In this document: positions 4,970-34,439 of the stretch, one piece after another | Layout: each line of letters opens with the position of its first letter | How positions within the stretch are numbered: the stretch's first letter is position 1 | Virus record (IMG/VR): IMGVR_UViG_3300034104_003795 | Location: 62,001-126,000 of that record | Length of the DNA: 64,000 nt | Reading direction: 5' to 3' (one strand) | The notes under the pieces: model-generated | The model's database searches: none | Seen by the model: only the letters and a program-made list of their open reading frames with translations | What the model was told of the DNA's origin: nothing | Position numbers and translations under genes: made by a program

Positions 4970-4978
4970 TTTTTCTAA

Positions 4979-5242
4979 TTAAAAGTAAATAGTTGCTTCA
5001 TTGTTTTCATTAATAGAAACTTCAACCGTATGCTTTAACACATTAAGTATGTACAAAATTTCAGGTTGGTCTAAAACTGCATCAACTAATGAAACTTGTC
5101 TTATATTAGCTCCTTCATTTTCGCTTACATACTTAATTTCAGAAAATTGAACACACTTTAAGTTTTCAGTAATTTGAAGAACTGCGTGTTCTGGTTGTCC
5201 TGCCAAGCCGATATTTACTATTCTTGCTGTTTGTTTTTCCAT
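4979..5242 (-). CDS. hypothetical protein
   Basis: 87 aa ORF. Confidence 0.7.
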   Translation of the reverse strand: MEKQTARIVNIGLAGQPEHAVLQITENLKCVQFSEIKYVSENEGANIRQVSLVDAVLDQPEILYILNVLKHTVEVSINENNEATIYF

Positions 5243-23214: not shown

Positions 23215-23230
23215 ATTATTAAGTTGTTTG

Positions 23231-23311
23231 TGCCCCAAGAGAGATTCGAACTCTCACACCTCTCGATATCAGTTCCTAAAACTGATGTGTCTACCGTTCC
23301 ACCATCAGGGC
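23231..23311 (-). tRNA. tRNA-Leu(TAG)
   Basis: Cloverleaf, anticodon arm tcagt-ttTAGga-actga, long variable arm. Confidence 0.93.
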
Positions 23312-23839
23312 ATATTTTTGTAATGATTTTAAAAATAATTCAATTCCTTTGTTGTGATTAGCTTCCCAATCATCCGGATTACCGCTATCACTTACATATT
23401 TGTATGCAGTAAAATCAAATCCATAAATCTTACATACCTTTGCAATTGAGTATGCTTCCATATCACATATTACAGATGGTGTGGTTTGAAAATGGTCTTG
23501 TGTATAACATATATTATATCCCAATCCATTGAAATCAATATTACCCATCAATATTTCATTATCAAATGGTGTTTTTGTTTTATCTGCAAATGGTCTAGCG
23601 TCCATATCGTTTTGGACAAATGTTTTACACTTAAATAAACTACCAACCATAACGGCATGCCCACCCGCACTTCCGTAGTTTATAACTACTACATCTTTGG
23701 GGTCTAAATCTTTAAGAGTTTCAGTTGCTTTTATAGCCGCATTTACTTTTCCAACACCAGTATAAACAACTTTAACACCTTCCGGTGCTTTTTCCTTTGG
23801 AAACTCATTTTCTAATGCAACAAATAATATAACGTTCAT
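23291..23839 (-). CDS. mtnN: MTA/SAH nucleosidase-like phosphorylase
   Basis: TGVGKVNAA, INYGSAGG, Q.DMD, CDMEAY, KYVSD; last 21 nt run into tRNA-Leu. Confidence 0.8.
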   Translation of the reverse strand: MNVILFVALENEFPKEKAPEGVKVVYTGVGKVNAAIKATETLKDLDPKDVVVINYGSAGGHAVMVGSLFKCKTFVQNDMDARPFADKTKTPFDNEILMGNIDFNGLGYNICYTQDHFQTTPSVICDMEAYSIAKVCKIYGFDFTAYKYVSDSGNPDDWEANHNKGIELFLKSLQKYALMVER

Positions 23840-23850
23840 AACAATAAGTA

Positions 23851-24023
23851 TGCTGTTAGAGTAGGATTCGAACCATACAGGAGGAGATTCAAAAAGTAAC
23901 ATTTAGTGCTTGCAAGCTGGTGGTCAACCCCATATTACTTTTCTATTTCTTTATCCTCGCCCACGAGACGAGTGGGTGTGTTTGCCAGGTTATAACATAG
24001 ATAACCAATTTCACCATCTAACA
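23851..24023 (-). ncRNA. giant tRNA-like RNA (GTC anticodon, D-loop hairpin insertion, ~80 nt branched variable arm)
   Basis: Acceptor TGTTAGA/TCTAACA-G, D arm GTGAAATT..GGCAAACAC, anticodon arm cccac-tcGTCtc-gtggg, T loop GGTTCGAATCC. Confidence 0.75.
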
Positions 24024-24028
24024 ATTTT

Positions 24029-24115
24029 TGCGGAGAAACAGGGATTCGAACCCCAGAACCTGTTACAGTTGCCGGTTTTCAAGACCGGTGCATTCAACCA
24101 CTCTGCCATTTCTCC
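24029..24115 (-). tRNA. tRNA-Ser(TGA)
   Basis: ccggt-ctTGAaa-accgg, long variable arm. Confidence 0.93.
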
Positions 24116-24132
24116 GTTAAGTACTCTAATAA

Positions 24133-24396
24133 TTAGAATACTTTTTCTTCGCTTTTACCGTCTAAACTATTTTCGGTATCGGCATGCTTTCTTCTAGCTT
24201 CTTCTGCTTCTTTATATATTCTAACCCAAGTTAAGAATATATCTACTGGCGCTAATATCCAACACATAATCAATAGAGCCATAGAATCTAATCCAGGTGA
24301 AATACCTAATCCACCAGCCATTACATCTCTATTCCATTTTCGTATTGACATTATAACACAATAGATGAAACACATTACATAATAAGTAATAAACAT
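24133..24396 (-). CDS. small membrane protein
   Basis: Two hydrophobic segments, located between tRNAs. Confidence 0.65.
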   Translation of the reverse strand: MFITYYVMCFIYCVIMSIRKWNRDVMAGGLGISPGLDSMALLIMCWILAPVDIFLTWVRIYKEAEEARRKHADTENSLDGKSEEKVF

Positions 24397-24415
24397 AACA
24401 TTTGTTTTTAATGAG

Positions 24416-24487
24416 TTACCCGAACTGGACTCGAACCAATACGAACAGAATCAAAATCTGTGATGCTAACCATTACATCATCGGGCA
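24416..24487 (-). tRNA. tRNA-Gln(TTG)
   Basis: acaga-ttTTGat-tctgt. Confidence 0.9.
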
Positions 24488-24492
24488 ATAAT

Positions 24493-24565
24493 CTCAAGCA
24501 TTCTACTTCCCGCAGTGCGAAATTGTATCTTACTTAGCCCATCGCTAGCGGTATGGGTACTTGAG
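24493..24565 (-). ncRNA. candidate structured small RNA between tRNA-Gly and tRNA-Gln
   Basis: Closing stem CTCAAGTA/TGCTTGAG with internal CCCAT/ATGGG hairpin. Confidence 0.4.
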
Positions 24566-24623
24566 TTTTAGTAATTGAAAAACATCTATTCTTCTTGCGG
24601 CCTAATACTAACAGGCCCACTTG

Positions 24624-24696
24624 AGCGAGAGACCAGGCTCGAACTGGCCACCTGAAGCTTGGAAGGCTACCGCTCTACCAAATGAGCTACTCTCGC
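24624..24696 (-). tRNA. tRNA-Gly(TCC)
   Basis: Loop ctTCCaa; near-duplicate body of the adjacent Gly(GCC). Confidence 0.9.
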
Positions 24697-24751
24697 TAAA
24701 GAGTGTAGTGGAAGATATCATTCCTGCAGTTACTACACGTTTTATCTGCTT

Positions 24752-24827
24752 TGGAGCGGAAGACCAGGCTCGAACTGGCCACCCTGACCTTGGCAAGGTC
24801 ATGCTCTACCAAATGAGCTACTTCCGC
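24752..24827 (-). tRNA. tRNA-Gly(GCC)
   Basis: tgacc-ttGCCaa-ggtca, encoded CCA. Confidence 0.93.
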
Positions 24828-24884
24828 AATTAATAGGTGAGGCTATTACCATCATTAAGTCTTTAATGCTTTAGACACCTATTG

Positions 24885-24958
24885 TGGACCCACTTGGAAT
24901 CGAACCAAGCACCTAATGATTATGAGTCATTTGCTCTAACCGAATGAGCTATAGGTCC
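24885..24958 (-). tRNA. tRNA-Ile2(CAT, lysidine type)
   Basis: aatga-ctCATaa-tcatt, G1-C72 acceptor resembling ileX; the Ile2 versus Met assignment is inferred. Confidence 0.8.
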
Positions 24959-24962
24959 GATG

Positions 24963-25036
24963 TGGAGAAGAAGGGATTCGAACCCATGACCCCCTGCGTG
25001 CAAGGCAGGTGCTCTAGCCAACTGAGCTACTTCCCC
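24963..25036 (-). tRNA. tRNA-Ala(TGC)
   Basis: cctgc-ctTGCac-gcagg, G3.U70. Confidence 0.93.
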
Positions 25037-25047
25037 ATAAGTGAACG

Positions 25048-25133
25048 TACCGGGGATGGGATTCGAACCCACACGAGCGATTTCTGCTCAAAAGATTTTA
25101 AGTCTTTCATGTCTACCATTCCATCACCCCGGC
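25048..25133 (-). tRNA. tRNA-Leu(TAA)
   Basis: aaaga-ctTAAaa-tcttt, long variable arm. Confidence 0.93.
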
Positions 25134-25158
25134 GGCGATACTATTTTTAATAACTATA

Positions 25159-25190
25159 CAAAGATACGAATAATAATTTAATTATCCAAA
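25159..25190 (-). promoter_or_regulatory. Bacteroidota sigma-A type promoter internal to the tRNA array
   Basis: TTTG-N20-TATCTTTG. Confidence 0.75.
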
Positions 25191-25627
25191 TCCTTTTTTA
25201 TATTATATATTTTAACCCTTCTGATTTTAGTTCCACTCTCATCAGGATTAATTAATATATCAATTTTTTTTCTCCACCTCTTTGCCATCAAATCTCTGAC
25301 AGTATAAACACCATCTAATTTTCCAGCACCCTTCACTCTTACTTTTTGTCCAAACTTATACTTTCGTTTCAGGTCTCTACTAATCGCTATTACCTTTTGT
25401 TTCTTTGGATTAAGACTATCCAACTTATAACCACTTGCGGTAATTAAGGGAGTTGAATCGGTTTGGCCGGCGGATACCGTATATGTTGTAACCGTAACTA
25501 CATCATAAGGTATGTGTTTCTTTTCTATCATTATATCCGCAACTTCTTCCTCACTCATTTCGGAGTCAATCATATTATGTGGAATAAACATAATAACAGT
25601 TAAGAATAAAAGAATAACTTTTCTCAT
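25178..25627 (-). CDS. 3D domain (MltA-B/RlpA-like) cell-wall protein
   Basis: Signal peptide; VTTY..QTDSTP.ITASG, IAISRDL, FGQKV, VRD.M, IDILI. Confidence 0.85.
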   Translation of the reverse strand: MRKVILLFLTVIMFIPHNMIDSEMSEEEVADIMIEKKHIPYDVVTVTTYTVSAGQTDSTPLITASGYKLDSLNPKKQKVIAISRDLKRKYKFGQKVRVKGAGKLDGVYTVRDLMAKRWRKKIDILINPDESGTKIRRVKIYNIKKDLDN

Positions 25628-25645
25628 AACTTATTTTTTATTTAG

Positions 25646-25719
25646 TGATTCGGAAAGGATTCGAACCTTTGACCCCAAACTTAGAAGGTTTGTGCTCTAT
25701 CCAGCTGAGCTACCGAACC
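25646..25719 (-). tRNA. tRNA-Arg(TCT)
   Basis: caaac-ctTCTaa-gtttg. Confidence 0.93.
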
Positions 25720-25722
25720 ATA

Positions 25723-25821
25723 TAGTAAGAGAGATACTACGTCTAATATCTCAATGTTTCTACCGGCCGTCTATGGAATATGCGCACTGACCATAAACTA
25801 AACTTTCGTCTGCTCTTACTA
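25723..25821 (-). ncRNA. candidate multibranch small RNA between tRNA-Asp and tRNA-Arg
   Basis: 9 bp closing stem TAGTAAGAG/CTCTTACTA plus three internal hairpins. Confidence 0.45.
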
Positions 25822-25825
25822 CTTG

Positions 25826-25896
25826 CGGAAAGTACGGGAATCGAACCCGTCACATTGCCGTGACAAGGCAACATTATACCGATTAACTAACTCTCC
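25826..25896 (-). tRNA. tRNA-Asp(GTC)
   Basis: ttgcc-ttGTCac-ggcaa, G73. Confidence 0.9.
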
Positions 25897-25925
25897 AAAT
25901 TACATTATCGTTCTTTAACTAATTT

Positions 25926-26183
25926 TTATTTTTTATTGTTAGTTAATTTTTGTTCTAATTTATCCAATCTCGAATCTAATTGAGAAAAGATGTGATTTTC
26001 TAATTCATCTGCTCTACGATTAAAGTCAGTTTGATTTCTATCAACTTGACGATACAAATCTTCGCCGATGCTTTCTAATTCTTTTTCTATTTTTCTTGCC
26101 TTAACAAGCCCAATAACAGCAACTATCGACACTGCGATAACCACCACTACAGACATTCCTAAAACGAATGATAATATTTCCAT
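25926..26183 (-). CDS. membrane-anchored coiled-coil protein
   Basis: N-terminal TM helix plus ...SQLDSRLDKLE; flanked by 15 bp inverted repeat. Confidence 0.7.
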   Translation of the reverse strand: MEILSFVLGMSVVVVIAVSIVAVIGLVKARKIEKELESIGEDLYRQVDRNQTDFNRRADELENHIFSQLDSRLDKLEQKLTNNKK

Positions 26184-26220
26184 AATTTATTTCTCCTATA
26201 TGTCAAAGAACGATAATGTG

Positions 26221-26293
26221 AGCCCAAGACAAGAATCGAACTTGCGACCTACTGATTACAAATCAGTTGCTCTACCTGCTGAGCTACTCGGGC
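26221..26293 (-). tRNA. tRNA-Thr(TGT)
   Basis: actga-ttTGTaa-tcagt. Confidence 0.93.
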
Positions 26294-26297
26294 GTTT

Positions 26298-26391
26298 AGG
26301 AAAGTAGAAGATGGGTGCGTGGACATCTACTTTTATGATTGGCATTTCTAACCGATTTATGCATACTAATATGCTTATCCCAATCAACCTT
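26298..26391 (-). ncRNA. candidate structured small RNA between tRNA-Glu and tRNA-Thr
   Basis: TGATTGG/CCAATCA, GCATA/TATGC and AAAGTAG/CTACTTT stems. Confidence 0.35.
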
Positions 26392-26393
26392 TG

Positions 26394-26465
26394 TACTCTG
26401 TACGGGATTCGAACCCGTATTACATCCGTGAAAGGGATGTGACCTAACCCTTAGTCGAACAGAGC
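26394..26465 (-). tRNA. tRNA-Glu(TTC)
   Basis: catcc-ctTTCac-ggatg. Confidence 0.93.
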
Positions 26466-26483
26466 GTTAATGTTAATGTTATA

Positions 26484-26515
26484 CAAATATACGAATAATA
26501 TCTGATATAACCAAA
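26484..26515 (-). promoter_or_regulatory. Bacteroidota sigma-A type promoter internal to the tRNA array
   Basis: TTTG-N20-TATATTTG. Confidence 0.75.
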
Positions 26516-26521
26516 TCTATT

Positions 26522-26665
26522 TTAACAATAGGTTTTATATTTTTTTATACCACCTTTCAAACGTCTTATACATATCATACAAGCTCCGTTTTCTCTTATT
26601 ATTTTTCTTATTCGGTATAACTTATTACTTCGTCTATTAATTTCAAACTTATCATTTTTCATAAT
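26522..26665 (-). CDS. small basic hypothetical protein
   Basis: Start trimmed to approximately MKNDKFE to clear tRNA-Ser. Confidence 0.35.
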   Translation of the reverse strand: MMKNDKFEINRRSNKLYRIRKIIRENGACMICIRRLKGGIKKYKTYC

Positions 26666-26678
26666 GTCCAATTTAATG

Positions 26679-26767
26679 CGGAGAATGTTGGATTCGAACC
26701 AACGGTACAACTTTCATCGTACAACGGTTTAGCAAACCGGCCCCATCGTCCACTCGGGCAATTCTCC
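26679..26767 (-). tRNA. tRNA-Ser(GCT)
   Basis: Loop ttGCTaa, long variable arm. Confidence 0.9.
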
Positions 26768-26771
26768 GTTG

Positions 26772-26844
26772 GGGTGTAAGGACGGTATCGAACCGTCTTA
26801 TCTAGCTCCACAAACTAGCGCATCACCTTAATGCTTCAAACACC
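26772..26844 (-). tRNA. tRNA-His(GTG)
   Basis: ctagt-ttGTGga-gctag, G-1/C73. Confidence 0.9.
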
Positions 26845-26847
26845 ATT

Positions 26848-26919
26848 TGGTTGCGGGGCCAGGAATCGAACCTGAATATCTGGCTTATGAGACCAAACGG
26901 ATTACCTAATCTCCCCACA
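26848..26919 (-). tRNA. tRNA-Met(CAT) with shortened D arm
   Basis: TGTGGGG/CCCCGCA-A-CCA, loop ctCATaa, D arm only GATT-AGGT-AATC. Confidence 0.75.
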
Positions 26920-26927
26920 ATATCAAG

Positions 26928-26998
26928 AGGCGAGTACAAGATTCGAACTTGTGTAAAAGCTTTTGCAGAGCTCCATATAACCACTCTAACAACTCGCC
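26928..26998 (-). tRNA. tRNA-Cys(GCA)
   Basis: gagct-ctGCAaa-agctt, U73. Confidence 0.92.
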
Positions 26999-27004
26999 AT
27001 TTTG

Positions 27005-27077
27005 TAGCCCCTAAAGGATTCGAACCCATACTCCGAAGTCCGTAGCTTCGTGTGCTAATCCATTACACCAAAGAGCC
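27005..27077 (-). tRNA. tRNA-Arg(ACG)
   Basis: cgaag-ctACGga-cttcg. Confidence 0.92.
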
Positions 27078-27081
27078 ATAG

Positions 27082-27152
27082 CACCGGTGGAAGGACTCGA
27101 ACCCTCACAAACAGTTTTGGAGACTGGTATGCTACCATTACACTACACCGAT
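27082..27152 (-). tRNA. tRNA-Trp(CCA)
   Basis: Loop ctCCAaa, G73. Confidence 0.9.
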
Positions 27153-27158
27153 ATATTG

Positions 27159-27232
27159 TTGGAATAAAAAGAATCGAACTTTTAACCTTCCGCGTATCAG
27201 ACGGATGCTCTAACCAATTGAGCTATATTCCA
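27159..27232 (-). tRNA. tRNA-Ile(GAT)
   Basis: tccgt-ctGATac-gcgga. Confidence 0.9.
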
Positions 27233-27280
27233 ATTTTGCACTTCCTATTTCCCAATGCTGTGTAGTGCGAACCATATCGG

Positions 27281-27354
27281 TTGGGAATGCAGGATTCGAA
27301 CCTACGGCCTCTAGCTCCCAAAGCTAGCGCGATACCTGACTACGCTAATTCCCA
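27281..27354 (-). tRNA. tRNA-Pro(TGG)
   Basis: ctagc-ttTGGga-gctag. Confidence 0.92.
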
Positions 27355-27429
27355 ATGTGATAAGTTTCCATCCTATCGTATAATGTGTACATCATTATTT
27401 TAACTCAATATTAAGTTCGGAACTTTTTG

Positions 27430-27503
27430 TGACCCCTAATGGATTCGAACCATTGACTCCTATATTAAAAGTATAGTGCTCTAACCAACTGAGCTAAGAG
27501 GTC
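27430..27503 (-). tRNA. tRNA-Lys(TTT)
   Basis: ctata-ctTTTaa-tatag. Confidence 0.93.
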
Positions 27504-27543
27504 TGACTTTTGTCATACTTGTCACTTTCCATAGTATTTGTTT

Positions 27544-27753
27544 TTAATTGTTATCTTCTAATTCTATTTTACAATATTCGTCCAATGATATTTTATCAAA
27601 TGTTATCCATTGTCCATTTCCAAAATCTACTGCGAACTTACCATCTTCTGGTAGATACGCAGTTACTATTCCTTTACTACCCATTTCAATTTTTCCTTTT
27701 GGTGTCACCAACTCTTTTATTAATGTACCAACTCCATGATTAAAATCTGCCAT
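27544..27753 (-). CDS. small SH3/beta-barrel-like hypothetical protein
   Basis: 69 aa ORF between tRNAs. Confidence 0.65.
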   Translation of the reverse strand: MADFNHGVGTLIKELVTPKGKIEMGSKGIVTAYLPEDGKFAVDFGNGQWITFDKISLDEYCKIELEDNN

Positions 27754-27775
27754 AATTGTTTTTTTAATTGTTAAG

Positions 27776-27848
27776 TGGTAATGAGTGGTATCGAACCACT
27801 TCCTAAAGATTTTCAGTCTTTCGCTTCTACCTAGTTAGCTTCATCACC
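27776..27848 (-). tRNA. tRNA-Phe(GAA)
   Basis: aaaga-ctGAAaa-tcttt. Confidence 0.92.
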
Positions 27849-27852
27849 GGTG

Positions 27853-27934
27853 TTGGGGTAGACGGACTCGAACCGCCGAACTCAAATGAGAGCTGATTTA
27901 CAGTCAGCCGCAATTGCCACTATGCGATACCCCA
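27853..27934 (-). tRNA. tRNA-Tyr(GTA)
   Basis: gctga-ctGTAaa-tcagc, long variable arm. Confidence 0.93.
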
Positions 27935-27939
27935 ATGGC

Positions 27940-28033
27940 GTTCCATATAACTCACATTTGATAGCCCTATCGTGCTACTCACTCAATCCTACAACAGCTT
28001 TCAACTGAGAGATTGTAGGAATGTGTATGGAAC
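27940..28033 (-). ncRNA. candidate three-way-junction small RNA between tRNA-Val and tRNA-Tyr
   Basis: GTTCCATA/TATGGAAC, CACATT/AATGTG, CCTACAA/TTGTAGG, CAGTT-GAAA-GCTG. Confidence 0.45.
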
Positions 28034-28039
28034 ATGTTG

Positions 28040-28114
28040 TGGAAGTTACAGGATTCGAACCTATGACCCTCACGGTGTAAACGTGATGCTCTAAACCAAC
28101 TGAGCTAAACTTCC
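28040..28114 (-). tRNA. tRNA-Val(TAC)
   Basis: tcacg-ttTACac-cgtga. Confidence 0.93.
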
Positions 28115-28122
28115 TACTTATC

Positions 28123-28140
28123 CAATATGTCAAAGAACTT
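28123..28140 (-). promoter_or_regulatory. rrn boxA-like antitermination element
   Basis: AAGTTCTTTGACATATTG just after the first tRNA of the array; related copies at 26197-26211, 29536-29547, 30018-30029. Confidence 0.55.
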
Positions 28141-28147
28141 AATCTTG

Positions 28148-28219
28148 CGCTCCCTCTTGGATTCGAACCAAGGACCAACAGATTAACAGTCTGCTGCGCT
28201 ACCGCTGCGCCAAAGGAGC
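28148..28219 (-). tRNA. tRNA-Asn(GTT)
   Basis: gcaga-ctGTTaa-tctgt. Confidence 0.93.
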
Positions 28220-28221
28220 TT

Positions 28222-28262
28222 AAAACGAAAAAACCTCTAACCGATTTTATTCAGTTAGAGGT
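28222..28262 (-). terminator. intrinsic terminator / attenuator directly upstream of tRNA-Asn
   Basis: ACCTCTAACTG-aataaaat-CGGTTAGAGGT followed by TTTTTCGTTTT. Confidence 0.8.
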
Positions 28263-28288
28263 CTTTCTATTTAAGTTAAGTTATGTAA

Positions 28289-28450
28289 TTACCCAACATC
28301 AGTGTCCTCTAACTGCTTCGTACTAATATAATCCACCTTGCCTAAATTTAAGTTTGCCGGATTACTTAACGTACTAAACATACGAATCCCAGCCCACTCA
28401 TTTCTCAATGTAGGTTGCGAACAATTTGTATGTAGTGTTAAAGTTTTCAT
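28289..28450 (-). CDS. putative attenuator leader peptide (53 aa, all 20 amino acids)
   Basis: MKTLTLHTNCSQPTLRNEWAGIRMFSTLSNPANLNLGKVDYISTKQLEDTDVG; codons 46-49 (CAGTTAGAGG) are the exact complement of the terminator 5' arm. Confidence 0.65.
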   Translation of the reverse strand: MKTLTLHTNCSQPTLRNEWAGIRMFSTLSNPANLNLGKVDYISTKQLEDTDVG

Positions 28451-28600
28451 CACTGTTTGTTTATATAAGTATATAATAATTTTATTTTCCGAATCTTTGT
28501 TAGTTTTATCAGGCTTAAATTGGGGAACATATTGATATGCCCCCCTTTTCAAGTTGTAATAAAAATTAAGATATGAAACGAACAACTTTTCAGTTGTTAG

Positions 28601-28646
28601 TAGCTCTCTCTATTGGAATCGAACCAATATGCAACCATTGAGAAAG
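28601..28646 (-). ncRNA. tRNA-like minihelix (acceptor stem plus T arm, no anticodon arm)
   Basis: CTTTCTC/GAGAGAG stem, ATTGG-TTCGATT-CCAAT T arm, 11-nt linker containing TGG. Confidence 0.5.
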
Positions 28647-28659
28647 TAAAAACGCTGAG

Positions 28660-29520
28660 AATATACGTTGGGATAACTAGCTTTAGAAAGATTATTTTGT
28701 TTCCTTTCGTTTCCACATCCTTTTGAGATGTACCAGTCAATGCAGGTTATTATAGATTAACCACTCTTAAAGTTGTAACTTACTCACCTATTACTCCCCT
28801 TATTCAATCCTGCCGAACTGATTAAACCTTGCGGGTCTATAAGCTTTTCGTAGATATCACATTCGCCTTGCGGGCGTTTGTGGCTGGGAACAACTCCCAA
28901 CTATGTATGCACCTTTCGGTCACAACTGATGAACACTTTTGCTTTTATTTATAATTGAATAATCAAATCCGCATTTGATAAAAGTTTTGGTTCGTAGATG
29001 GATTCAGGTAGCGGTTCACCACTAGCTCTGTCCCCTTTTGAAGAACAGAATACTATACTACCCGATGCGTTATCTCAACGCCATACTTCAAGTCATCTTC
29101 ATTAATAGGGATTGGTGTCCCATATTAAAGGATAGTAACGGCACCACCCGTACACAGTCTTATCTTACGTCCTTTCGGATAGCTTGATTGTCAAGACCAC
29201 TTTGGTATTGAATCACGCAATAATAAAAAGGGATTAGCTTTCTATTTCTTACAATAATCCTATGAGTTATTCTTATCGTTCTTCCGAACTCAACTGAACA
29301 ATCTACAATTGCTCAGTCACCCAAACTCTTCTGCTACAGTGTTACCCTCACATACAAAGCCCAAATGATATCTCACTTGCCTACTCAAGCTCATAACCTT
29401 ACAGGGATATGAACCGCAAAATGCTTAACCAAACATTTCACTTTATCCTACTTTCGTAGTTTATTTAATGACCATAGGCGGCCATTTTGTACACTATATA
29501 ACACGAAGTTATTATGTGTA
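28660..29520 (-). ncRNA. large structured ncRNA, GOLLD-like (~860 nt)
   Basis: No minus-strand ORF >=60 aa in the track, higher GC, many GNRA-capped hairpins (CTAC-GAAA-GTAG, TCC-GAAA-GGA, ACC-GAAA-GGT, two GCAA loops), own promoter, next to phage tRNA cluster; family name not confirmed by a covariance search. Confidence 0.7.
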
Positions 29521-29564
29521 AATTATTTCAATAATGTAAAGAACTTTGTTATTTGATAACTTTA

Positions 29565-29596
29565 TAAAGATACGAAATCTTTTTCAAACTACCAAA
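29565..29596 (-). promoter_or_regulatory. Bacteroidota-type promoter (array unit 1; drives the GOLLD-like RNA)
   Basis: TTTGGTAGTTTGAAAAAGATTTCG-TATCTTTA. Confidence 0.8.
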
Positions 29597-29606
29597 TTTA
29601 TTTTTA

Positions 29607-29663
29607 AAGATTCTCAATTTTGTTTTCTGGTCAAACCAATCAACTACTTTATTTTTGAATCTT
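29607..29663 (-). ncRNA. candidate small RNA 1 of the promoter array
   Basis: Starts just after its promoter; ends pair (AAGATTC/GAATCTT). Confidence 0.45.
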
Positions 29664-29665
29664 CA

Positions 29666-29697
29666 TAAAGATACGATAATTTTTTCAAACTACCAAA
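29666..29697 (-). promoter_or_regulatory. Bacteroidota-type promoter (array unit 2)
   Basis: TTTG-N20-TATCTTTA. Confidence 0.8.
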
Positions 29698-29708
29698 TCT
29701 TTTTTTAA

Positions 29709-29791
29709 AAGTTATTAAGGTATCCGGCTTTATTAGGAGCTTGCGCCCCTCACACAATCGGTTTTATTATTGTTGGCTTCAACCTTAACTT
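29709..29791 (-). ncRNA. candidate small RNA 2 of the promoter array
   Basis: Closing stem AAGTTAAGG/CCTTAATAACTT; internal GGGGC-GCAA-GCTCC GNRA hairpin. Confidence 0.55.
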
Positions 29792-29794
29792 TGT

Positions 29795-29826
29795 TAAAGA
29801 TACGAAAGTTTTTTCAAACTACCAAA
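29795..29826 (-). promoter_or_regulatory. Bacteroidota-type promoter (array unit 3)
   Basis: TTTG-N20-TATCTTTA. Confidence 0.8.
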
Positions 29827-29836
29827 TCTTTTTTTA

Positions 29837-29934
29837 AATCTATTATAATGGGGTTGGGTTGTACCCTTTTCAATCTGCTTTCACACCCATCACTCCCAAA
29901 GAGCTGTCAGTATCAGATACCACTATTATAGATT
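29837..29934 (-). ncRNA. candidate small RNA 3 (co-transcribed after tRNA-fMet)
   Basis: Long closing stem AATCTATAATAGTGG/CCATTATAATAGATT. Confidence 0.5.
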
Positions 29935-29937
29935 TTG

Positions 29938-30009
29938 TTGCGAGGGATGGATTCGAACCACCGGCCTCCAGGTTATGAGCCTGGCGAGCTACCACTGCTC
30001 TACCTCACG
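29938..30009 (-). tRNA. tRNA-fMet(CAT), initiator
   Basis: C1:A72 mismatch, ccagg-ctCATaa-cctgg. Confidence 0.9.
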
Positions 30010-31072: not shown

Positions 31073-31798
31073 TTATTTAGATTTTTGCATAATCTTTACC
31101 AATGACATTGCACTCTTTTTAACAGGAGCATCATCTTGATATCTAAGCGCAGATTGTACTTTTATATCTCTACCGGTTTCAGGATTTCTTACAGTTTTAT
31201 TAAGAATATCCTTTGGTAACATTTTGATTAATTTATCATCTCTTTCTGCAGATGATCCTGGTAAATTTTGTAAATTTCTTTGTGTACCTTTTTTTCTTTG
31301 AAATGCGAAAACTTGTTTGGTATTTCTCATTTTTGAATATGCTTGCTGCATTGTACCAGGATGCATATCCCCAACACTTTCTACTCTACCATTTTTATAA
31401 ACCAAAACACCTTTACCTTTGGTATCTTCGCCACCATACAAAACTGAATCCTGTGTGAATTCATTTCCTAATTGGTGAATATCTTTAATTGAAATGTTTG
31501 GAACGAATAAGGAAATTTCGGTTGAATCAACTAATTTATCTTTTGGACAATCAAAATAGTTTACTCTATTATCTTGACACTCTTGCCAATGACCTTCCAT
31601 CTCAAAAAATCCTAATCCTTTAGCTCTTATTTTATCCGCTAATATTTTGTTAGCCGCTTTATTTTCAGCAGGAGTATTTGCATATCTATAAGCAGTTATA
31701 ACTCCCCAACTTTTTACCTTCTTTTTACCTTGAACGTGTTGGAGAACCCTACCCAGTGAGGCTTCAGTTAGTTGTGCTATTTTACATCCTTTTTCCAT
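31073..31798 (-). CDS. conserved phage protein (DUF3293-like) with C-terminal NPETGRDIKVQSAL module
   Basis: E.SLGRV.QH, ITAYR, N...N..L, GHWQE, QDSVL. Confidence 0.6.
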   Translation of the reverse strand: MEKGCKIAQLTEASLGRVLQHVQGKKKVKSWGVITAYRYANTPAENKAANKILADKIRAKGLGFFEMEGHWQECQDNRVNYFDCPKDKLVDSTEISLFVPNISIKDIHQLGNEFTQDSVLYGGEDTKGKGVLVYKNGRVESVGDMHPGTMQQAYSKMRNTKQVFAFQRKKGTQRNLQNLPGSSAERDDKLIKMLPKDILNKTVRNPETGRDIKVQSALRYQDDAPVKKSAMSLVKIMQKSK

Positions 31799-32010
31799 TC
31801 CTTATATATTTCATTAGATAAATATATAGAATCGTGGAAATGAATCTTTTCCTGAACCTTTGCTAGCTTTTCTTTTAAAGAATCAAGTTTGGTTTGTCTA
31901 GCCCATTTTCCCATATTATTTACAGGTGGATAGGCTTCCCAATATGCAAGTTGTTCTTGCAATTCTTTTTCCCTAATCTTTAGCTTTACTATTTTCTCAT
32001 TTATTTCCAT
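31777..32010 (-). CDS. coiled-coil hypothetical protein
   Basis: First gene after promoter 32018-32049. Confidence 0.65.
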   Translation of the reverse strand: MEINEKIVKLKIREKELQEQLAYWEAYPPVNNMGKWARQTKLDSLKEKLAKVQEKIHFHDSIYLSNEIYKEWKKDVK

Positions 32011-32017
32011 ATCTATA

Positions 32018-32049
32018 CAAATATACGAATTTTATTTGATATTACCAAA
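32018..32049 (-). promoter_or_regulatory. Bacteroidota-type promoter
   Basis: TTTG-N20-TATATTTG. Confidence 0.75.
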
Positions 32050-32277
32050 TTTATTTAAACACTTCGTAAACCAGATATAAAGTCCAAAAAATAACCCCGC
32101 AATACAATACAAAACGAAGTTCGCTTTCCATAAACTTCCCGTCAGTAGTATTAGGGAATACTGAACGGCATCGAATCCAAACGGATTGAAGAATAGAGCC
32201 AACATCAATGCCATGTCTTTGTAAAGCATTAAGCGATTGCTTTTGTCCTTTAATTTGTTTATTGTTTTTACTATCAC
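32032..32277 (-). CDS. small membrane protein
   Basis: LALFFNPFGFDA..Y..AGLFFGLY pattern. Confidence 0.6.
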   Translation of the reverse strand: MIVKTINKLKDKSNRLMLYKDMALMLALFFNPFGFDAVQYSLILLTGSLWKANFVLYCIAGLFFGLYIWFTKCLNKFGNIK

Positions 32278-32316
32278 CTTCGTCCATGTGTGGTTTATTT
32301 CGTTTAGGTGTGTAAC

Positions 32317-32961
32317 TTATTTTATTAGGTTGTGTTTAACCAATTGTTTAAATATATATTCCGATACTTTTCTATCAGATGGATAGTGTAATCCACTTAA
32401 TTCTCTTGCTCTCTTTATCTCGTGATAAAAATCATCAAGCTCTTCCGCTAATGCTGGATTCATCTTTCCAAAGTGATAAAGTATAACTAAAAAATCCATT
32501 GTGTGTCCAGATGGATATGCTGCCGAATTTGCATCAGTAGCGGTAATCGGATGTAAATCCAATCTTAACTCTTTAGCTAATTGATAAGGTCTTGGACGAT
32601 TGAATTTATCCTTTAAGTAAAACGTTATAGGGTCTATATCACCAACCCATTTTAGAATTTCTTCTTTACTCACATCTAATCCCAATTTCTTTGCTACAAT
32701 AACAAAAAAATCATAGTGATTTGTTTCTATCAACTTACAAAAACGGATATCATCTTCATCTGCGTTATTAGTTATCTTTGTAAGATATTCTAATTCGTTT
32801 TTTGTTTCATCAGATGAGTTAGCTGGAAATGGATGATTTTCTAATACATCTTTGATAATACCAGTTTCAATAGCAGCCTTTAATATACCGGCTCTATCCT
32901 CTTTAACTTTAGCTTCTTGCTCTCTAGTTGTATTACCATATTTAATATCATCCAAATTCAT
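32317..32961 (-). CDS. PAP2 superfamily phosphatase
   Basis: K..FNRPRP, YPSGH, RELSGLHYPSD. Confidence 0.88.
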   Translation of the reverse strand: MNLDDIKYGNTTREQEAKVKEDRAGILKAAIETGIIKDVLENHPFPANSSDETKNELEYLTKITNNADEDDIRFCKLIETNHYDFFVIVAKKLGLDVSKEEILKWVGDIDPITFYLKDKFNRPRPYQLAKELRLDLHPITATDANSAAYPSGHTMDFLVILYHFGKMNPALAEELDDFYHEIKRARELSGLHYPSDRKVSEYIFKQLVKHNLIK

Positions 32962-33401
32962 TAAACCTGCTTTCTTTTAAATATATCTATTATTTGTTTT
33001 ATCTTACTTTTCTTAAAGTGTCCAGAATCAATCACTTTAAAATTATTCCCGTTTCTGTCAATAAATTGCCAATGAGCTTCGGTTAATCCAAACCAATCGT
33101 CTAAATGATTTAAAACATCTTTTGGTTTAAAATTTGAACAACTATATAAATCAAACTGAAACATCGCTGGGTTTTCATTATCCCAAACGTGAATTGATGC
33201 GTGTGATGTAGCTAATGTAACAGTTCCGGTTATCCCTTCGTTACCCGGTTCATTAACATAAACCGAAGTGGGGCCGGCTACTACTTTCATTCCCACATTT
33301 TGTACTAATTGTGTAAACCAGATGTTTAACACTTTGTCTGTTTTTGGTGGAGTCTTTACATAACCCTTTACCAAAAGATGAAGATGGTTTGGTACGAACA
33401 T
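32961..33401 (-). CDS. speD: S-adenosylmethionine decarboxylase proenzyme
   Basis: G.TG...LATSHASIHVW (self-cleavage at TS/SH), DLYSC. Confidence 0.85.
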   Translation of the reverse strand: MFVPNHLHLLVKGYVKTPPKTDKVLNIWFTQLVQNVGMKVVAGPTSVYVNEPGNEGITGTVTLATSHASIHVWDNENPAMFQFDLYSCSNFKPKDVLNHLDDWFGLTEAHWQFIDRNGNNFKVIDSGHFKKSKIKQIIDIFKRKQV

Positions 33402-33438
33402 TATTTAAACTTTATTTATTTGTGTATATAAATATAAT

Positions 33439-33813
33439 TTAAATATTTTTAGGTTTTCTTCCTCTTTTTTTCTTTGGTTTTGGATTATCTTTCTCATTTT
33501 GCAGTTTAAGTATTTCTGCACATTTTTCATATTCCTCAACTTCAATATAATAATCCATCATTTTCTTTAATGTTAAATCTATATCATCTTTTGATATTAT
33601 AAAATCAACATTAATAGGTGGTTCAAATGTTCGTGGTGTTTTTGGTTTTTGTGCCAATTTAGGAGTAACTTGTAATATAACTCTATCATCTTCATCTGAT
33701 TGAAGAAAATCAAATACGTTAGAGTATATCGAATCCATTATCACTCCCTTATTCGCATCTGCCCATTGTTCTATGGGAGTGCCAAAATCTATGTATATTC
33801 TTTTTGGTGTCAT
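33439..33813 (-). CDS. hypothetical protein with UVR-like helix pair
   Basis: YIEVEEYEKCAEI motif, basic tail. Confidence 0.65.
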   Translation of the reverse strand: MTPKRIYIDFGTPIEQWADANKGVIMDSIYSNVFDFLQSDEDDRVILQVTPKLAQKPKTPRTFEPPINVDFIISKDDIDLTLKKMMDYYIEVEEYEKCAEILKLQNEKDNPKPKKKRGRKPKNI

Positions 33814-34439
33814 ATCTTTGGGAATAATATGTTTTCCATAAAATACTTTGCTTTTTCCTCACCAATTAGTGCTTTCAATGCTGAAAACGTTCTTGGGTTA
33901 GTAGCCTGTATTTGACAATAAATATTTTGTTTCTCTATTACACCTTCAATATTATCGGTTTTCTTTTCCAACCAAAGAAGTGAATTAAGATACCAATCGT
34001 ATTTTTCCACTACCCAATTACAAAAACGAACCAATTCCTCATCGGATTCCGGTTTTAACATAATAAATCTATCGGAAAAAACAGTAGCCCATTCAGGTAT
34101 CTTTTTTCTTTGTTTAAAATCCATACCATCATCAAAAGGATATGTTTTAAGACCAGGACTCAAATCCATATATGCACCCGTTACCATTTTTTCAGTTGAT
34201 ATAACATCAAATCCAAAAATAGGCTCTGGTGAATCTTTATGTGGGAATGTTGTAAAGTGTAGTACTTCTATTTTACCATCACCATATCTTTCCACGTGAG
34301 CCATACGAAATAACTTTGATTCATATCTAAAATTATCCCATCCATAATCTTCGGTTTCTAATGGTTGGCAATTAGGCGCCTTCTCCACCATCTCCTTCAA
34401 CGTCCACGCTAGCTGATTCAGATACTCTTTGTAATTCAT
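33810..34439 (-). CDS. ferredoxin-dependent bilin reductase (PcyA/PcyX/PebS family)
   Basis: RMAHVE, VLHF..FP....PIFGFD, DLSP, R..PEWA.VFS, Q..YC..Q..NPRT. Confidence 0.85.
   Translation of the reverse strand: MNYKEYLNQLAWTLKEMVEKAPNCQPLETEDYGWDNFRYESKLFRMAHVERYGDGKIEVLHFTTFPHKDSPEPIFGFDVISTEKMVTGAYMDLSPGLKTYPFDDGMDFKQRKKIPEWATVFSDRFIMLKPESDEELVRFCNWVVEKYDWYLNSLLWLEKKTDNIEGVIEKQNIYCQIQATNPRTFSALKALIGEEKAKYFMENILFPKI

What the first reader, a model, noticed from the sequence alone, without database searches (positions are those of the whole stretch)
23231..30009. Self-sufficient tRNA set: 26 tRNAs covering all 20 amino acids, fMet and Ile2
Seen: one tRNA per codon box, mostly U34 in family boxes (Leu TAG, Ser TGA, Ala TGC, Thr TGT, Pro TGG, Val TAC), plus Gly TCC/GCC, Arg ACG/TCT, Ile GAT/CAT and Met/fMet. 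There is almost no redundancy. Established: this resembles minimal organellar or Mycoplasma sets, and phage tRNAs can offset host tRNA destruction. Inference: a selected replacement for the whole host tRNA pool rather than a codon-bias supplement.
Basis: partly seen in the sequence, partly recalled or inferred. Interest (0 to 1): 0.6.

Follow-up and report, generated by a model that had tools for sequence, protein, structure and literature searches.

The report
Near-minimal complete phage tRNA array
A 274-kb freshwater phage carries 26 real tRNA genes, essentially one broad-reading tRNA per codon box, clustered around a GOLLD RNA gene; this is a tidy, conserved example of a known kind of phage tRNA island, and one of its three Met-anticodon genes is odd enough that "fully self-sufficient" is not proven.

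Summary
ARAGORN and Rfam both tRNA genes at 23230-30009 (- strand). They carry 24 anticodons, and they are the only tRNAs in the 274-kb genome.

The set equals my count of 25 decoding functions plus Gly-GCC, as in the Chlamydomonas plastid. It reads 98.05% of phage codons by conservative wobble and 99.98% by superwobble.

The CAT genes:
- 29937-30009 is an initiator.
- 24884-24958 is Ile2-like.
- 26848-26919 has a compact D arm and initiator-like features, so a true elongator tRNA-Met is unproven.

The same 26-gene set and order recur in related jumbo phages, although individual genes have been swapped. Other relatives carry 16-24 tRNAs.

Against a Chitinophagaceae host proxy, every phage anticodon also exists in the host, codon usage is alike (r 0.89), and 20 of 26 anticodon loops are identical. 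This gives no support to codon compensation or nuclease-escape mutations.

The array most likely provides an autonomous tRNA supply amplified with phage copy number, still dependent on host processing, CCA addition, modification and charging. It is a new member of a known kind.

The parts
29937..30009 (-). tRNA-fMet (CAT), initiator
   Evidence: 64.7 bits. C1xA72 mismatch and A11:U24. 0.78 identity to the host-proxy initiator. A promoter-like motif lies directly upstream.
28652..29556 (-). GOLLD RNA. The conserved 3' domain is 28652-29065; the variable 5' half extends to about 29556.
   Evidence: RF02032 at 306.8 bits, model positions 1-416 of 416. Conserved in L009, L011 and L012. Metatranscriptome contigs lie over 28653-29466 in 4 runs.
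28604..28646 (-). tRNA-like minihelix (7-bp acceptor-like stem plus T arm) directly 3' of GOLLD
   Evidence: Sequence. Conserved in 4 phages: 100% of cells paired, 3 compensatory pairs. MFE fold.
28147..28219 (-). tRNA-Asn (GTT)
   Evidence: 69.6 bits
28039..28114 (-). tRNA-Val (TAC)
   Evidence: 70.3 bits
27852..27934 (-). tRNA-Tyr (GTA), long variable arm
   Evidence: (53.9 bits)
27775..27848 (-). tRNA-Phe (GAA)
   Evidence: 58.6 bits
27429..27503 (-). tRNA-Lys (TTT)
   Evidence: 69.8 bits
27279..27354 (-). tRNA-Pro (TGG)
   Evidence: 67.7 bits
27158..27232 (-). tRNA-Ile (GAT)
   Evidence: 72.5 bits
27081..27152 (-). tRNA-Trp (CCA)
   Evidence: 57.3 bits
27004..27077 (-). tRNA-Arg (ACG)
   Evidence: 48 bits
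26927..26998 (-). tRNA-Cys (GCA)
   Evidence: 54.4 bits
26848..26919 (-). Compact CAT tRNA with a 4-bp D stem, 4-nt D loop, U1:A72, A11:U24 and encoded CCA. Met-type; its role as elongator, initiator or both is unresolved.
   Evidence: (30.3 bits)
26770..26843 (-). tRNA-His (GTG), with encoded G-1, C73 and CCA
   Evidence: (41.4 bits)
26678..26767 (-). tRNA-Ser (GCT)
   Evidence: 49.9 bits
26393..26465 (-). tRNA-Glu (TTC)
   Evidence: 58.9 bits
26220..26293 (-). tRNA-Thr (TGT)
   Evidence: 71.4 bits
25825..25896 (-). tRNA-Asp (GTC)
   Evidence: 59 bits
25645..25719 (-). tRNA-Arg (TCT)
   Evidence: 67.9 bits
25047..25133 (-). tRNA-Leu (TAA)
   Evidence: 56.8 bits
24962..25036 (-). tRNA-Ala (TGC), G3:U70
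   Evidence: (69.4 bits)
24884..24958 (-). tRNA-Ile2-like (CAT)
   Evidence: 68.3 bits. The best hit in all 5426 E. coli genomes is the tRNA-Ile next to mug, which I take to be ileX. C4:G69 and C5:G68. 0.81 identity to the host-proxy Ile2-type gene.
24752..24827 (-). tRNA-Gly (GCC), CCA encoded
   Evidence: (60.1 bits). 0.92 identity to the host proxy.
24623..24696 (-). tRNA-Gly (TCC)
   Evidence: 59 bits. 0.92 identity to the host proxy.
24415..24487 (-). tRNA-Gln (TTG)
   Evidence: 53.5 bits
24030..24115 (-). tRNA-Ser (TGA)
   Evidence: 57.3 bits
23230..23311 (-). tRNA-Leu (TAG)
   Evidence: 54 bits
30031..30062 (-). Bacteroidota-type promoter-like motif (TTTG-N-TAnnTTTR) upstream of tRNA-fMet
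   Evidence: 31 motifs in the window against 7.2 expected; 0 of 100 shuffles reach 31.
29565..29826 (-). Three tandem copies of the same promoter-like motif (29795-29826, 29666-29697, 29565-29596). The last one abuts the 5' edge of the GOLLD-covered stretch.
26484..26515 (-). Promoter-like motif upstream of tRNA-Glu
25159..25190 (-). Promoter-like motif upstream of tRNA-Leu (TAA)
28227..28261 (-). Terminator-like hairpin (8-bp stem, 12-nt loop, U run) just upstream of tRNA-Asn
   Evidence: Read from the sequence. The scanner missed it because of its loop limit.
28289..28552 (-). ORF, 87 aa, unknown function
27544..27753 (-). ORF, 69 aa, unknown function
25926..26183 (-). ORF, 85 aa, hydrophobic N-terminal stretch, unknown function
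25178..25627 (-). ORF, 149 aa, unknown function. It sits in the same slot between Arg-TCT and Leu-TAA in the related arrays.
24133..24396 (-). ORF, 87 aa, unknown function
23291..23902 (-). ORF with a weak nucleoside phosphorylase (PNP_UDP_1) hit. Its last 21 nt and stop codon overlap tRNA-Leu (TAG).

Best explanation
The interval is a lineage-conserved tRNA island of a 274-kb T4-like jumbo phage from freshwater lakes. The host is probably a low-GC Bacteroidota, with Chitinophagaceae favoured. The island carries one broad-reading tRNA for every codon box: U34 in seven family boxes, ACG for CGN, G34 or U34 in the split boxes, an initiator, an Ile2-type CAT tRNA and a compact Met-type CAT tRNA, plus Gly-GCC. 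A GOLLD RNA gene sits inside it.

Proposed mechanism: the genes are transcribed in several units from host-sigma-type (Bacteroidota) promoters. Host enzymes then cut the transcripts, complete the CCA end, modify the tRNAs (lysidine, inosine) and charge them. Because the genes multiply with the phage genome, the infected cell gains a second, almost complete decoding pool. That pool does not depend on the host's single-copy tRNA genes or on the fate of the host pool. It therefore sustains translation of a very large AT-rich gene set late in a long infection, whatever depletes host tRNAs (shut-off, loss of the host chromosome, or tRNA-cleaving defence).

Shown: the genes, their repertoire, their conservation, the promoter motifs, and the decoding arithmetic.
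Inferred: expression of the tRNAs, four-way reading by U34, the benefit to the phage, and the host.
For: - All 26 genes pass two methods and are the only tRNAs in the genome.
- The repertoire equals my count of 25 decoding functions plus Gly-GCC. It reads 98.05% of phage codons by conservative wobble and 99.98% by superwobble. The single unread codon, CGG, is the rarest (0.2 per 1000).
- Gly, the only doubled box, is the most used four-codon box, and GGT is its commonest codon.
- The same set and near-identical gene order occur in L009/L010. G007 (238 kb, rated 100% complete) has the same set and order except Ser-ACT for Ser-GCT. G008 has 26 genes in a different order, lacking Ala-TGC and with an Ile-TAT elsewhere on its contig.
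- Orthologous slots show 236 compensatory stem pairs and mosaic identities, for example Thr 0.53 to L009 but 0.96 to L018 (G005). Selection therefore keeps the repertoire while genes are exchanged.
- Random subsets of a host-like gene pool are almost never complete.
- Promoter motifs of Bacteroidota type are enriched (31 against 7.2 expected) and lie before fMet, GOLLD, Glu and Leu-TAA.
- The host proxy Ferruginibacter has 34 detected tRNA genes with 31 anticodons, each in a single copy apart from four CAT genes. In it the Val and Pro boxes are served by U34 alone.
- Codon compensation is not supported.
Against: - tRNA expression was not shown. The metatranscriptome data are contigs only and resolve GOLLD but not the tRNAs.
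- The compact CAT tRNA has initiator-like features, so a canonical elongator tRNA-Met may be missing.
- Relatives carry only 16-24 tRNAs, and the nearest cultured relative, Flavobacterium phage immuto, has 3. A complete set is therefore not obligatory in this group.
- The host is inferred only from promoter type, the homologues of one phage gene and tRNA similarity.
- Nothing shows that host tRNAs are depleted.
Confidence: 0.55

Rival explanations
1. Anti-defence set. The tRNAs exist mainly to replace host tRNAs that are cut by tRNA-targeting defence nucleases (PrrC, PARIS, retron effectors or Schlafen-like enzymes), as shown for phage T5. A full set is insurance against any such nuclease.
For: The mechanism is established in other phages (PMC10264068, PMC11555353, PMC11464382, PMC13056530). 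A one-per-box set would cover any target. Three isoacceptors (Ile-GAU position 38, His positions 37-38, Val positions 32 and 38) differ from the host proxy in every clade member that carries them.
Against: 20 of 26 anticodon loops are identical to the host proxy. That includes Lys, Tyr, Asn, Arg and Thr; the Asp loop differs only at position 32. I know these as the usual nuclease targets. The loop-mutation signature described in PMC10264068 is therefore largely absent. No defence nuclease of the host is known, and the host itself is only a proxy.
Confidence: 0.2
2. Codon-usage compensation. The phage carries tRNAs for codons that it uses more than its host does.
For: The chosen isoacceptors read A- or U-ending codons, which dominate this 33% GC genome. 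If the true host were a higher-GC Chitinophagaceae (homologue loci reach 41-52% GC), a mismatch would exist.
Against: With the low-GC proxy (34.6% GC), codon usage correlates at r 0.89. Codons with a cognate phage tRNA are not enriched in the phage (p 0.31). Every phage anticodon already exists in the proxy. A supplement would not need all 20 amino acids plus an initiator.
Confidence: 0.12
3. GOLLD-linked module. The array is primarily the cargo or partner of the GOLLD RNA, for example tRNAs held or delivered by the GOLLD cage. Alternatively it is a mobile tRNA-GOLLD cassette that spreads by recombination, with general translation supply as a by-product.
For: GOLLD lies inside the array in all four diverged relatives examined. 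A conserved tRNA-like minihelix follows it. GOLLD next to tRNA islands and downstream of a Met-tRNA is a known association (PMC12286853, PMC6582537). The mosaic identities show cassette-like exchange.
Against: The function of GOLLD is unknown. ARAGORN and Rfam find no tRNA between 28652 and 29556. The repertoire logic (one tRNA per box, matched to codon use) is explained by decoding needs and not by GOLLD.
Confidence: 0.08

Closest known systems
Large tRNA islands of jumbo and T5-like phages (for example Xanthomonas phage XacN1 with 56 tRNAs for all 20 amino acids, PMC5852040; Shigella phage Sf14 with 26 tRNAs for 19 amino acids, PMC12482277; the tRNAs of phage T5, PMC11555353)
   Same: Clustered phage tRNA genes that cover all or nearly all amino acids. 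The proposed role is to keep translation going during infection.
   Different: Here there is almost no redundancy (24 anticodons in 26 genes). There are no C34 isoacceptors other than CAT and CCA. The same slots are conserved across a clade. By contrast, an unrelated huge-phage contig examined here (G011) has 33 tRNAs with duplicates, C34 species and a CTA suppressor.
Minimal decoding sets of plastids and Mycoplasma (superwobble; PMC8877259)
   Same: One U34 tRNA per four-codon box and G34 or U34 in two-codon boxes. There is an extra Gly-GCC, exactly as in the Chlamydomonas plastid. ACG is the only CGN reader. A CAU-anticodon tRNA reads AUA.
   Different: The set is carried by a virus beside a host proxy that has a fuller set of 31 anticodons. 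The U34 modification state and four-way reading are untested. The elongator tRNA-Met is not canonical.
GOLLD RNA within tRNA arrays (Rfam RF02032; PMC12286853; PMC6582537)
   Same: A full-length match in a phage, downstream of a Met-tRNA, with tRNA genes on both sides.
   Different: Bacteroidota-type promoter motifs lie upstream. A conserved acceptor/T-arm minihelix lies immediately 3' of the Rfam model end. I did not find this described in the papers I could read.
Flavobacterium phage vB_FspM_immuto (Immutovirus), the nearest cultured relative by large terminase (57.5% identity)
   Same: T4-like head-assembly and packaging genes (terminase, gp20-like capsid assembly protein). The host belongs to Bacteroidota.
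   Different: 160 kb with only 3 tRNA genes.

Membership tests
Phage tRNA gene array (tRNA island) | Twenty or more clustered genes that pass a tRNA covariance model | tested here: met
   26 of 26 score above the Rfam gathering score, and ARAGORN agrees.
Phage tRNA gene array (tRNA island) | Located on a viral genome | tested here: met
   A 274-kb single contig held as a virus record. 270 of 273 long ORFs lie on one strand, and some ORFs are giant. The T4-like terminase is 57.5% identical to that of a cultured Flavobacterium phage. IMG/VR holds relatives.
GOLLD RNA (RF02032) | Match to the covariance model above the gathering score, over the full model | tested here: met
   306.8 bits against a gathering score of 150, model positions 1-416 of 416.
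GOLLD RNA (RF02032) | Long RNA (over 800 nt) with a variable 5' half, actually made as RNA | tested here: inconclusive
   Metatranscriptome contigs from 4 runs lie over 28653-29466. Depth drops at about 29556 and 28653. The data are contigs only, with no mapped ends.
GOLLD RNA (RF02032) | Homo-oligomeric cage | not testable with these tools
   Known from cryo-EM of another family member (PMC12286853).
Minimal superwobble decoding set (plastid or Mycoplasma type) | A single U34 tRNA per four-codon box and no redundant isoacceptors | tested here: met
   Leu-TAG, Val-TAC, Ser-TGA, Pro-TGG, Thr-TGT and Ala-TGC each stand alone. Gly has TCC plus GCC. Arg has ACG.
Minimal superwobble decoding set (plastid or Mycoplasma type) | U34 reads all four codons | not testable with these tools
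   Indirect evidence only: the host proxy has U34-only Val and Pro boxes. That search scored 150 of 251 candidates, so some host tRNAs may have been missed.
Minimal superwobble decoding set (plastid or Mycoplasma type) | Every sense codon and initiation are covered | tested here: inconclusive
   CGG has no reader, and the elongator tRNA-Met is doubtful.
Bacterial initiator tRNA (gene 29937-30009) | Unpaired or weak 1:72, A11:U24, G:C pairs at the bottom of the anticodon stem | tested here: met
   C1xA72 and A11:U24 are present. G30:C40 and G31:C39 are present, so two of the three G:C pairs. Nearest to the host-proxy initiator.
tRNA-Ile2 (lysidine type; gene 24884-24958) | CAU anticodon, with sequence closer to Ile2 than to Met tRNAs, and C4:G69/C5:G68 (TilS determinants in E. 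coli, from my own knowledge) | tested here: met
   The best hit in all E. coli genomes is the tRNA-Ile beside mug. 0.81 identity to the host-proxy Ile2-type gene against 0.60-0.65 to its other CAT genes. The acceptor pairs are visible.
tRNA-Ile2 (lysidine type; gene 24884-24958) | C34 is converted to lysidine | not testable with these tools
   No TilS-like gene was found in the phage. A host enzyme would be needed.
Elongator tRNA-Met (gene 26848-26919) | Y11:R24, a stable 1:72 pair, and a standard D arm | tested here: not met
   The gene has A11:U24, U1:A72 and a 4-bp D stem with a 4-nt loop. Of the 40 viral tRNAs sharing its anticodon arm that could be parsed, 37 have a weak or mismatched 1:72. 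In L012 the same slot holds an elongator-type gene, and L011 holds a degenerate copy that neither tool called. I therefore do not file it as a canonical elongator. It may still work as one.
Nuclease-evading phage tRNAs (T5 type, PMC10264068) | Anticodon-loop substitutions relative to host tRNAs | tested here: inconclusive
   20 of 26 loops are identical to the host proxy. Only Ile, His and Val differ in every clade member that carries them. The true host is unknown.

The most novel reading that the evidence does not exclude
The compact CAT tRNA (26848-26919) is a dual-purpose tRNA-Met, as in animal mitochondria. It would serve as the elongator in arrays that also have a canonical initiator, and as the initiator in arrays that have a separate elongator. 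It belongs to a widespread, structurally conserved class borne by phages. With it, the 26-gene array would be truly complete. Together with GOLLD, whose 3' end would be set by RNase P cutting at the conserved tRNA-like minihelix, and a phage tmRNA, this clade would carry the whole RNA side of a translation system able to outlast collapse of the host tRNA pool.
Probability: 0.2. Interest if true: 0.7.

Novelty: new member of a known kind. Interest (0 to 1): 0.45.

Why it matters
Phage tRNA islands and their link with GOLLD RNA are known, but their purpose is still debated. This clade offers an unusually clean natural experiment. It has a repertoire cut down to one tRNA per codon box, kept constant while the individual genes are exchanged, and it sits beside relatives with partial sets. 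That pattern shows selection on the repertoire itself. It also gives testable predictions about four-way reading by U34, about an unusual Met tRNA, and about what GOLLD does next to tRNAs.

Tried and rejected
- A megablast of the array against the phage collection found only short matches to single tRNAs and no close relative.
- PHROGs on the ORFs in and beside the array gave no named function apart from a weak SAM-dependent methyltransferase hit on the flanking ORF at 31073-31798. A PDB sequence search with the 149-aa array ORF found nothing.
- A BLAST of the compact CAT tRNA against E. coli genomes gave no match.
- Sigma-70-type promoters are not enriched (29 found against 28.4 expected). 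I therefore rejected that promoter model in favour of the Bacteroidota motif.
- I searched for phage-encoded tRNA enzymes in four ways: Pfam annotations on near-identical contigs covering most of the window, motif patterns over all 273 long ORFs, NCBIfam on 10 ORFs and PHROGs on 10 more. None was found. The one exception is a weak PSTK/PNK-like P-loop kinase at 54481-55272, far below its curated cut-off. This search was not exhaustive.
- I tried to show tRNA expression from four metatranscriptome runs. Only contigs are held. Low-depth contigs span His-CAT-Cys-Arg and Trp-Ile-Pro, and the higher-depth tRNA pieces carry foreign flanks, so no conclusion is possible for the tRNAs.
- The paper by Morgado et al. 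2020 on GOLLD in Mycobacterium tRNA arrays is not held.
- I considered a tRNA remnant between Ser-TGA and the nucleosidase-like ORF. The T-arm does not pair, so I dropped it.

Full report
**Observation.**
- Rfam's tRNA model scores all 26 above its gathering score of 29 bits (repeated with laxer filters). The range is 30.3-72.5 bits.
- All 26 draw as cloverleaves with the expected identity marks. These include G3:U70 in Ala, long variable arms in Leu, Ser and Tyr, and an encoded G-1 with C73 in His.
- A scan of the whole 273,997-bp contig finds no other tRNA.
- There are 24 distinct anticodons. CAT occurs three times, and Gly is the only box with two tRNAs.
- By my own count, 25 functions are needed under superwobble: 8 four-codon boxes plus 17 others, including initiator, elongator Met and AUA-Ile. 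The set is those 25 plus Gly-GCC.
- PMC8877259 describes the same layout, including the extra Gly-GCC, for the Chlamydomonas plastid.

**The three CAT genes.**
- 29937-30009 has C1xA72 and A11:U24 and is closest to the host-proxy initiator. It is an initiator.
- 24884-24958 has C4:G69 and C5:G68. Its best match in all 5426 E. coli genomes is the tRNA-Ile beside mug, which I recognise as ileX. It is 0.81 identical to the Ile2-type gene of the host proxy against 0.60-0.65 to that genome's other CAT genes. It is Ile2-like.
- 26848-26919 is the weak call at 30.3 bits. It has a 4-bp D stem with a 4-nt loop, U1:A72, A11:U24 and an encoded CCA, and no E. coli match.
  - It is not a decayed gene. Its anticodon arm occurs in more than 117 IMG/VR contigs. 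The compact D stem covaries between phages: GATT/AATC here, GGTT/AACC and GGAT/ATCC elsewhere.
  - Of 44 unique tRNAs sharing that arm, 40 could be parsed. Of these, 37 have a weak or mismatched 1:72 and 35 have A73. These are initiator-like traits.
  - In one array type with two CAT genes plus Ile-TAT, the other CAT is elongator-type, so the compact one is the initiator by elimination.
  - Yet in the window, L009, G007 and G008 it sits beside a canonical-looking initiator and an Ile2-type gene, with no canonical elongator.
  - In L012 the same slot holds an elongator-type gene scoring 68 bits. In L011 the slot holds a degenerate CAT copy that neither ARAGORN nor Rfam called.
  - Its role as elongator, second initiator or both is unresolved.

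**What else lies in the interval.**
- Rfam finds a full-length GOLLD RNA at 28652-29065 (306.8 bits), between tRNA-fMet and tRNA-Asn.
- Immediately 3' of the model end lies a tRNA-like minihelix at 28604-28646, with a 7-bp acceptor-like stem and a canonical T arm. In four diverged phages every cell pairs, and three pairs change on both sides. With partners slid, only 42-58% pair. Four sequences is a small sample.
- The Bacteroidota promoter consensus TTTG-N18-21-TAnnTTTR occurs 31 times in the window against 7.2 expected, and no shuffle of 100 reaches 31. Nearly all copies are on the coding strand.
- Copies lie before tRNA-fMet, three times in tandem before GOLLD, and before tRNA-Glu and tRNA-Leu-TAA.
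- None precedes the Asn-to-Ser-GCT block. That block follows a terminator-like hairpin.
- Sigma-70-type promoters are not enriched.
- Six small ORFs of unknown function are interleaved.

**RNA evidence.**
- All runs are held as contigs only. The tool warns that depth cannot rank genes.
- In four freshwater metatranscriptome runs from four studies, contigs at 95% identity or more lie over 28653-29466.
- The depth of these contigs is hundreds to tens of thousands. Contigs over neighbouring ORFs and tRNA spacers in the same lay have depth 2-12.
- Coverage stops at about 29556, just inside the last promoter motif.
- One contig ends at 28653 against sequencing-adapter letters (my reading of the loose letters).
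- I read this as GOLLD, or very close relatives of it, being an abundant RNA of about 900 nt in situ. The depth may sum related phages.
- tRNA expression cannot be judged. The low-depth contigs spanning several tRNAs could be precursor RNA or carried-over DNA. The higher-depth tRNA pieces carry foreign flanks.

**Genome and host.**
- The contig has 33% GC, 270 of 273 long ORFs on one strand, and ORFs of 3069-4184 aa.
- Its large terminase is 57.5% identical to that of Flavobacterium phage immuto, a T4-like phage of a Bacteroidota host.
- Near-identical contigs occur in several lake metagenomes.
- A phage-encoded TonB-dependent receptor has its best cellular homologues (50-54% identity, full length) mainly in Chitinophagaceae such as Ferruginibacter and Sediminibacterium.
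- Phage tRNAs are up to 0.92 identical to those of Ferruginibacter yonginensis.
- The host is therefore inferred to be a Bacteroidota, with Chitinophagaceae favoured. It is not known.

**Relatives.**
- The 149-aa array ORF was used to fetch diverged phages.
- L009/L010 (80% protein identity) have the same 26 genes in nearly the same order (Pro has moved). L011 has 24 Rfam calls, L012 has 19-21, and G005 has 16.
- G007 (238 kb, rated 100% complete) has the same 26-gene order, with Ser-ACT in place of Ser-GCT.
- G008 has 26 genes in a different order. Its array lacks Ala-TGC, and an Ile-TAT gene lies elsewhere on the contig.
- None of the syntenic relatives (L009/L010, L011, L012, G005, G007) has a duplicated isoacceptor other than Gly, or an extra C34 species.
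- An unrelated huge-phage contig (G011) has a redundant 33-gene set.
- Phage immuto has only 3 tRNAs.
- Across 23 anticodon groups, 236 stem pairs show compensatory change. Identities are mosaic: Thr is 0.53 to L009 but 0.96 to L018 (G005), and Pro is 1.00 to L018 (G005) but 0.83 to L009.
- The slots are kept while the genes are exchanged. This is the best evidence that the repertoire itself is under selection.
- Against a null of drawing 26 of the proxy's 34 genes, amino-acid completeness occurs in 0.1% of draws and box completeness in 5e-7.

**Decoding and the rival hypotheses.**
- The set reads 98.05% of phage codons by conservative wobble and 99.98% by superwobble. Only CGG is left, and it is the rarest codon.
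- The host proxy has 34 detected tRNA genes with 31 anticodons, each in a single copy apart from four CAT genes. That search scored 150 of 251 candidates, so a few may be missed.
- All 24 phage anticodons are present in the proxy. The proxy's extras are Ala-GGC, Arg-CCG, Arg-CCT, Leu-CAA, Leu-GAG, Ser-GGA and Thr-GGT.
- Phage and proxy codon usage correlate at r 0.89. Codons cognate to phage tRNAs are not enriched in the phage (p 0.31). Codon compensation is therefore not supported, unless the true host has a much higher GC content.
- Anticodon loops are identical to the proxy in 20 of 26 genes. Only Ile, His and Val differ in every clade member that carries them.
- The loop-mutation signature of nuclease-evading phage tRNAs (PMC10264068) is therefore largely absent.
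- The phage is not independent of the host. 23 of 26 genes lack CCA. No CCA-adding enzyme, TilS, TadA, aminoacyl-tRNA synthetase or RNA-repair enzyme was found in a non-exhaustive screen.

**Mechanism proposed.**
- Host RNA polymerase transcribes the island from several promoters.
- Host enzymes mature and charge the tRNAs.
- Gene copies rise with phage replication.
- The infected cell thus gains a near-complete second decoding pool that does not depend on the host's single-copy tRNA genes.
- The benefit is sustained translation of a very large genome when host supply is limiting or lost.
- Which cause of loss matters (shut-off, chromosome breakdown or defence nucleases) is open.

**Comparison and novelty.**
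- Phage tRNA islands covering all amino acids are known (PMC5852040). GOLLD in tRNA islands and downstream of a Met-tRNA is also known (PMC12286853, PMC6582537).
- This is a new member of that kind.
- It is notable for its plastid-like economy, its clade-wide slot conservation with gene exchange, the compact Met tRNA, and the minihelix after GOLLD.

Noticed in passing
Metatranscriptome contigs from four lake runs lie over it. Their depths are orders of magnitude above those of contigs over the flanks (contig data, with the caveats that brings).
   Followed up: yes
window 28604-28646 (- strand); L009 about 4418-4460, L011 about 4377-4418, L012 about 4469-4510: A conserved tRNA-like minihelix (acceptor-like stem plus T arm, no D or anticodon arm) lies directly after the GOLLD model end. 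Compensatory changes occur across four phages. It could mark an RNase P cut that sets the GOLLD 3' end.
   Followed up: partly
L028:6074-6460 (- strand), equal to genome 171074-171460, outside the window: The phage encodes a tmRNA. ARAGORN calls it with a 24-residue tag ending LAVAA, and Rfam RF00023 scores it at 83.1 bits (gathering score 47) over the full model.
   Followed up: partly
window 29565-29826 (- strand): Three tandem, nearly identical promoter-like repeats lie about 100-130 nt apart between tRNA-fMet and GOLLD. Each is followed by a short non-coding stretch, and what these produce is unknown. A 13-nt inverted repeat also brackets about 65 nt just after tRNA-fMet (about 29835-29925).
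   Followed up: no
window 23291-23311: The last 21 nt and the stop codon of the nucleosidase-like ORF (23291-23902) lie inside tRNA-Leu (TAG). Excising the tRNA from a shared transcript would leave that mRNA without a stop codon.
   Followed up: no
IMG/VR loci L141-L220, for example L147, L163, L164, L167, L197, L199, L200: The anticodon arm of the compact CAT tRNA is shared by a large class of phage CAT tRNAs with a weak or mismatched 1:72. A subset has the same miniature D arm, with covariation. These occur in at least two unrelated array types.
   Followed up: partly
L268 (G007) 4925-5009; also L147 and L197: In these relatives the AGY-Ser slot holds an ACT (A34) anticodon instead of GCT. 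This is unusual for bacteria-type tRNA-Ser. It fits the strong AGT-over-AGC bias seen in the window's phage (22.5 against 2.7 per 1000).
   Followed up: no
window 54481-55272 (- strand): A 263-aa P-loop kinase (Pfam AAA_33) has a weak match to the seryl-tRNA(Sec) kinase (PSTK) family (E 3.6e-8, far below the curated cut-off). PSTK is related to polynucleotide kinases. It could act on RNA ends, but this is untested.
   Followed up: partly
window 31073-34935 (- strand): Auxiliary genes lie just upstream of the array: heme oxygenase, ferredoxin-dependent bilin reductase, AdoMet decarboxylase and an S-AdoMet lyase (Pfam hits on near-identical contigs). Further along are NifU, an IscA-like Fe-S assembly protein, GTP cyclohydrolase I, TerC, an APS kinase and two purine-nucleoside-phosphorylase-family genes.
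   Followed up: no
L022:13749-17009 (+ strand), equal to genome 28749-32009, outside the window: One of only three long + strand ORFs is a 1086-aa TonB-dependent-receptor-like protein. It has full-length homologues at 50-54% identity, mainly in Chitinophagaceae, and was used here as the host clue.
   Followed up: partly
L115-L140 (Ferruginibacter yonginensis tRNA loci): Both initiator-like tRNAs of this host proxy have U1:A72 rather than the classical C1xA72 mismatch. In this lineage the 1:72 pair may therefore not separate initiators from elongators.
   Followed up: no
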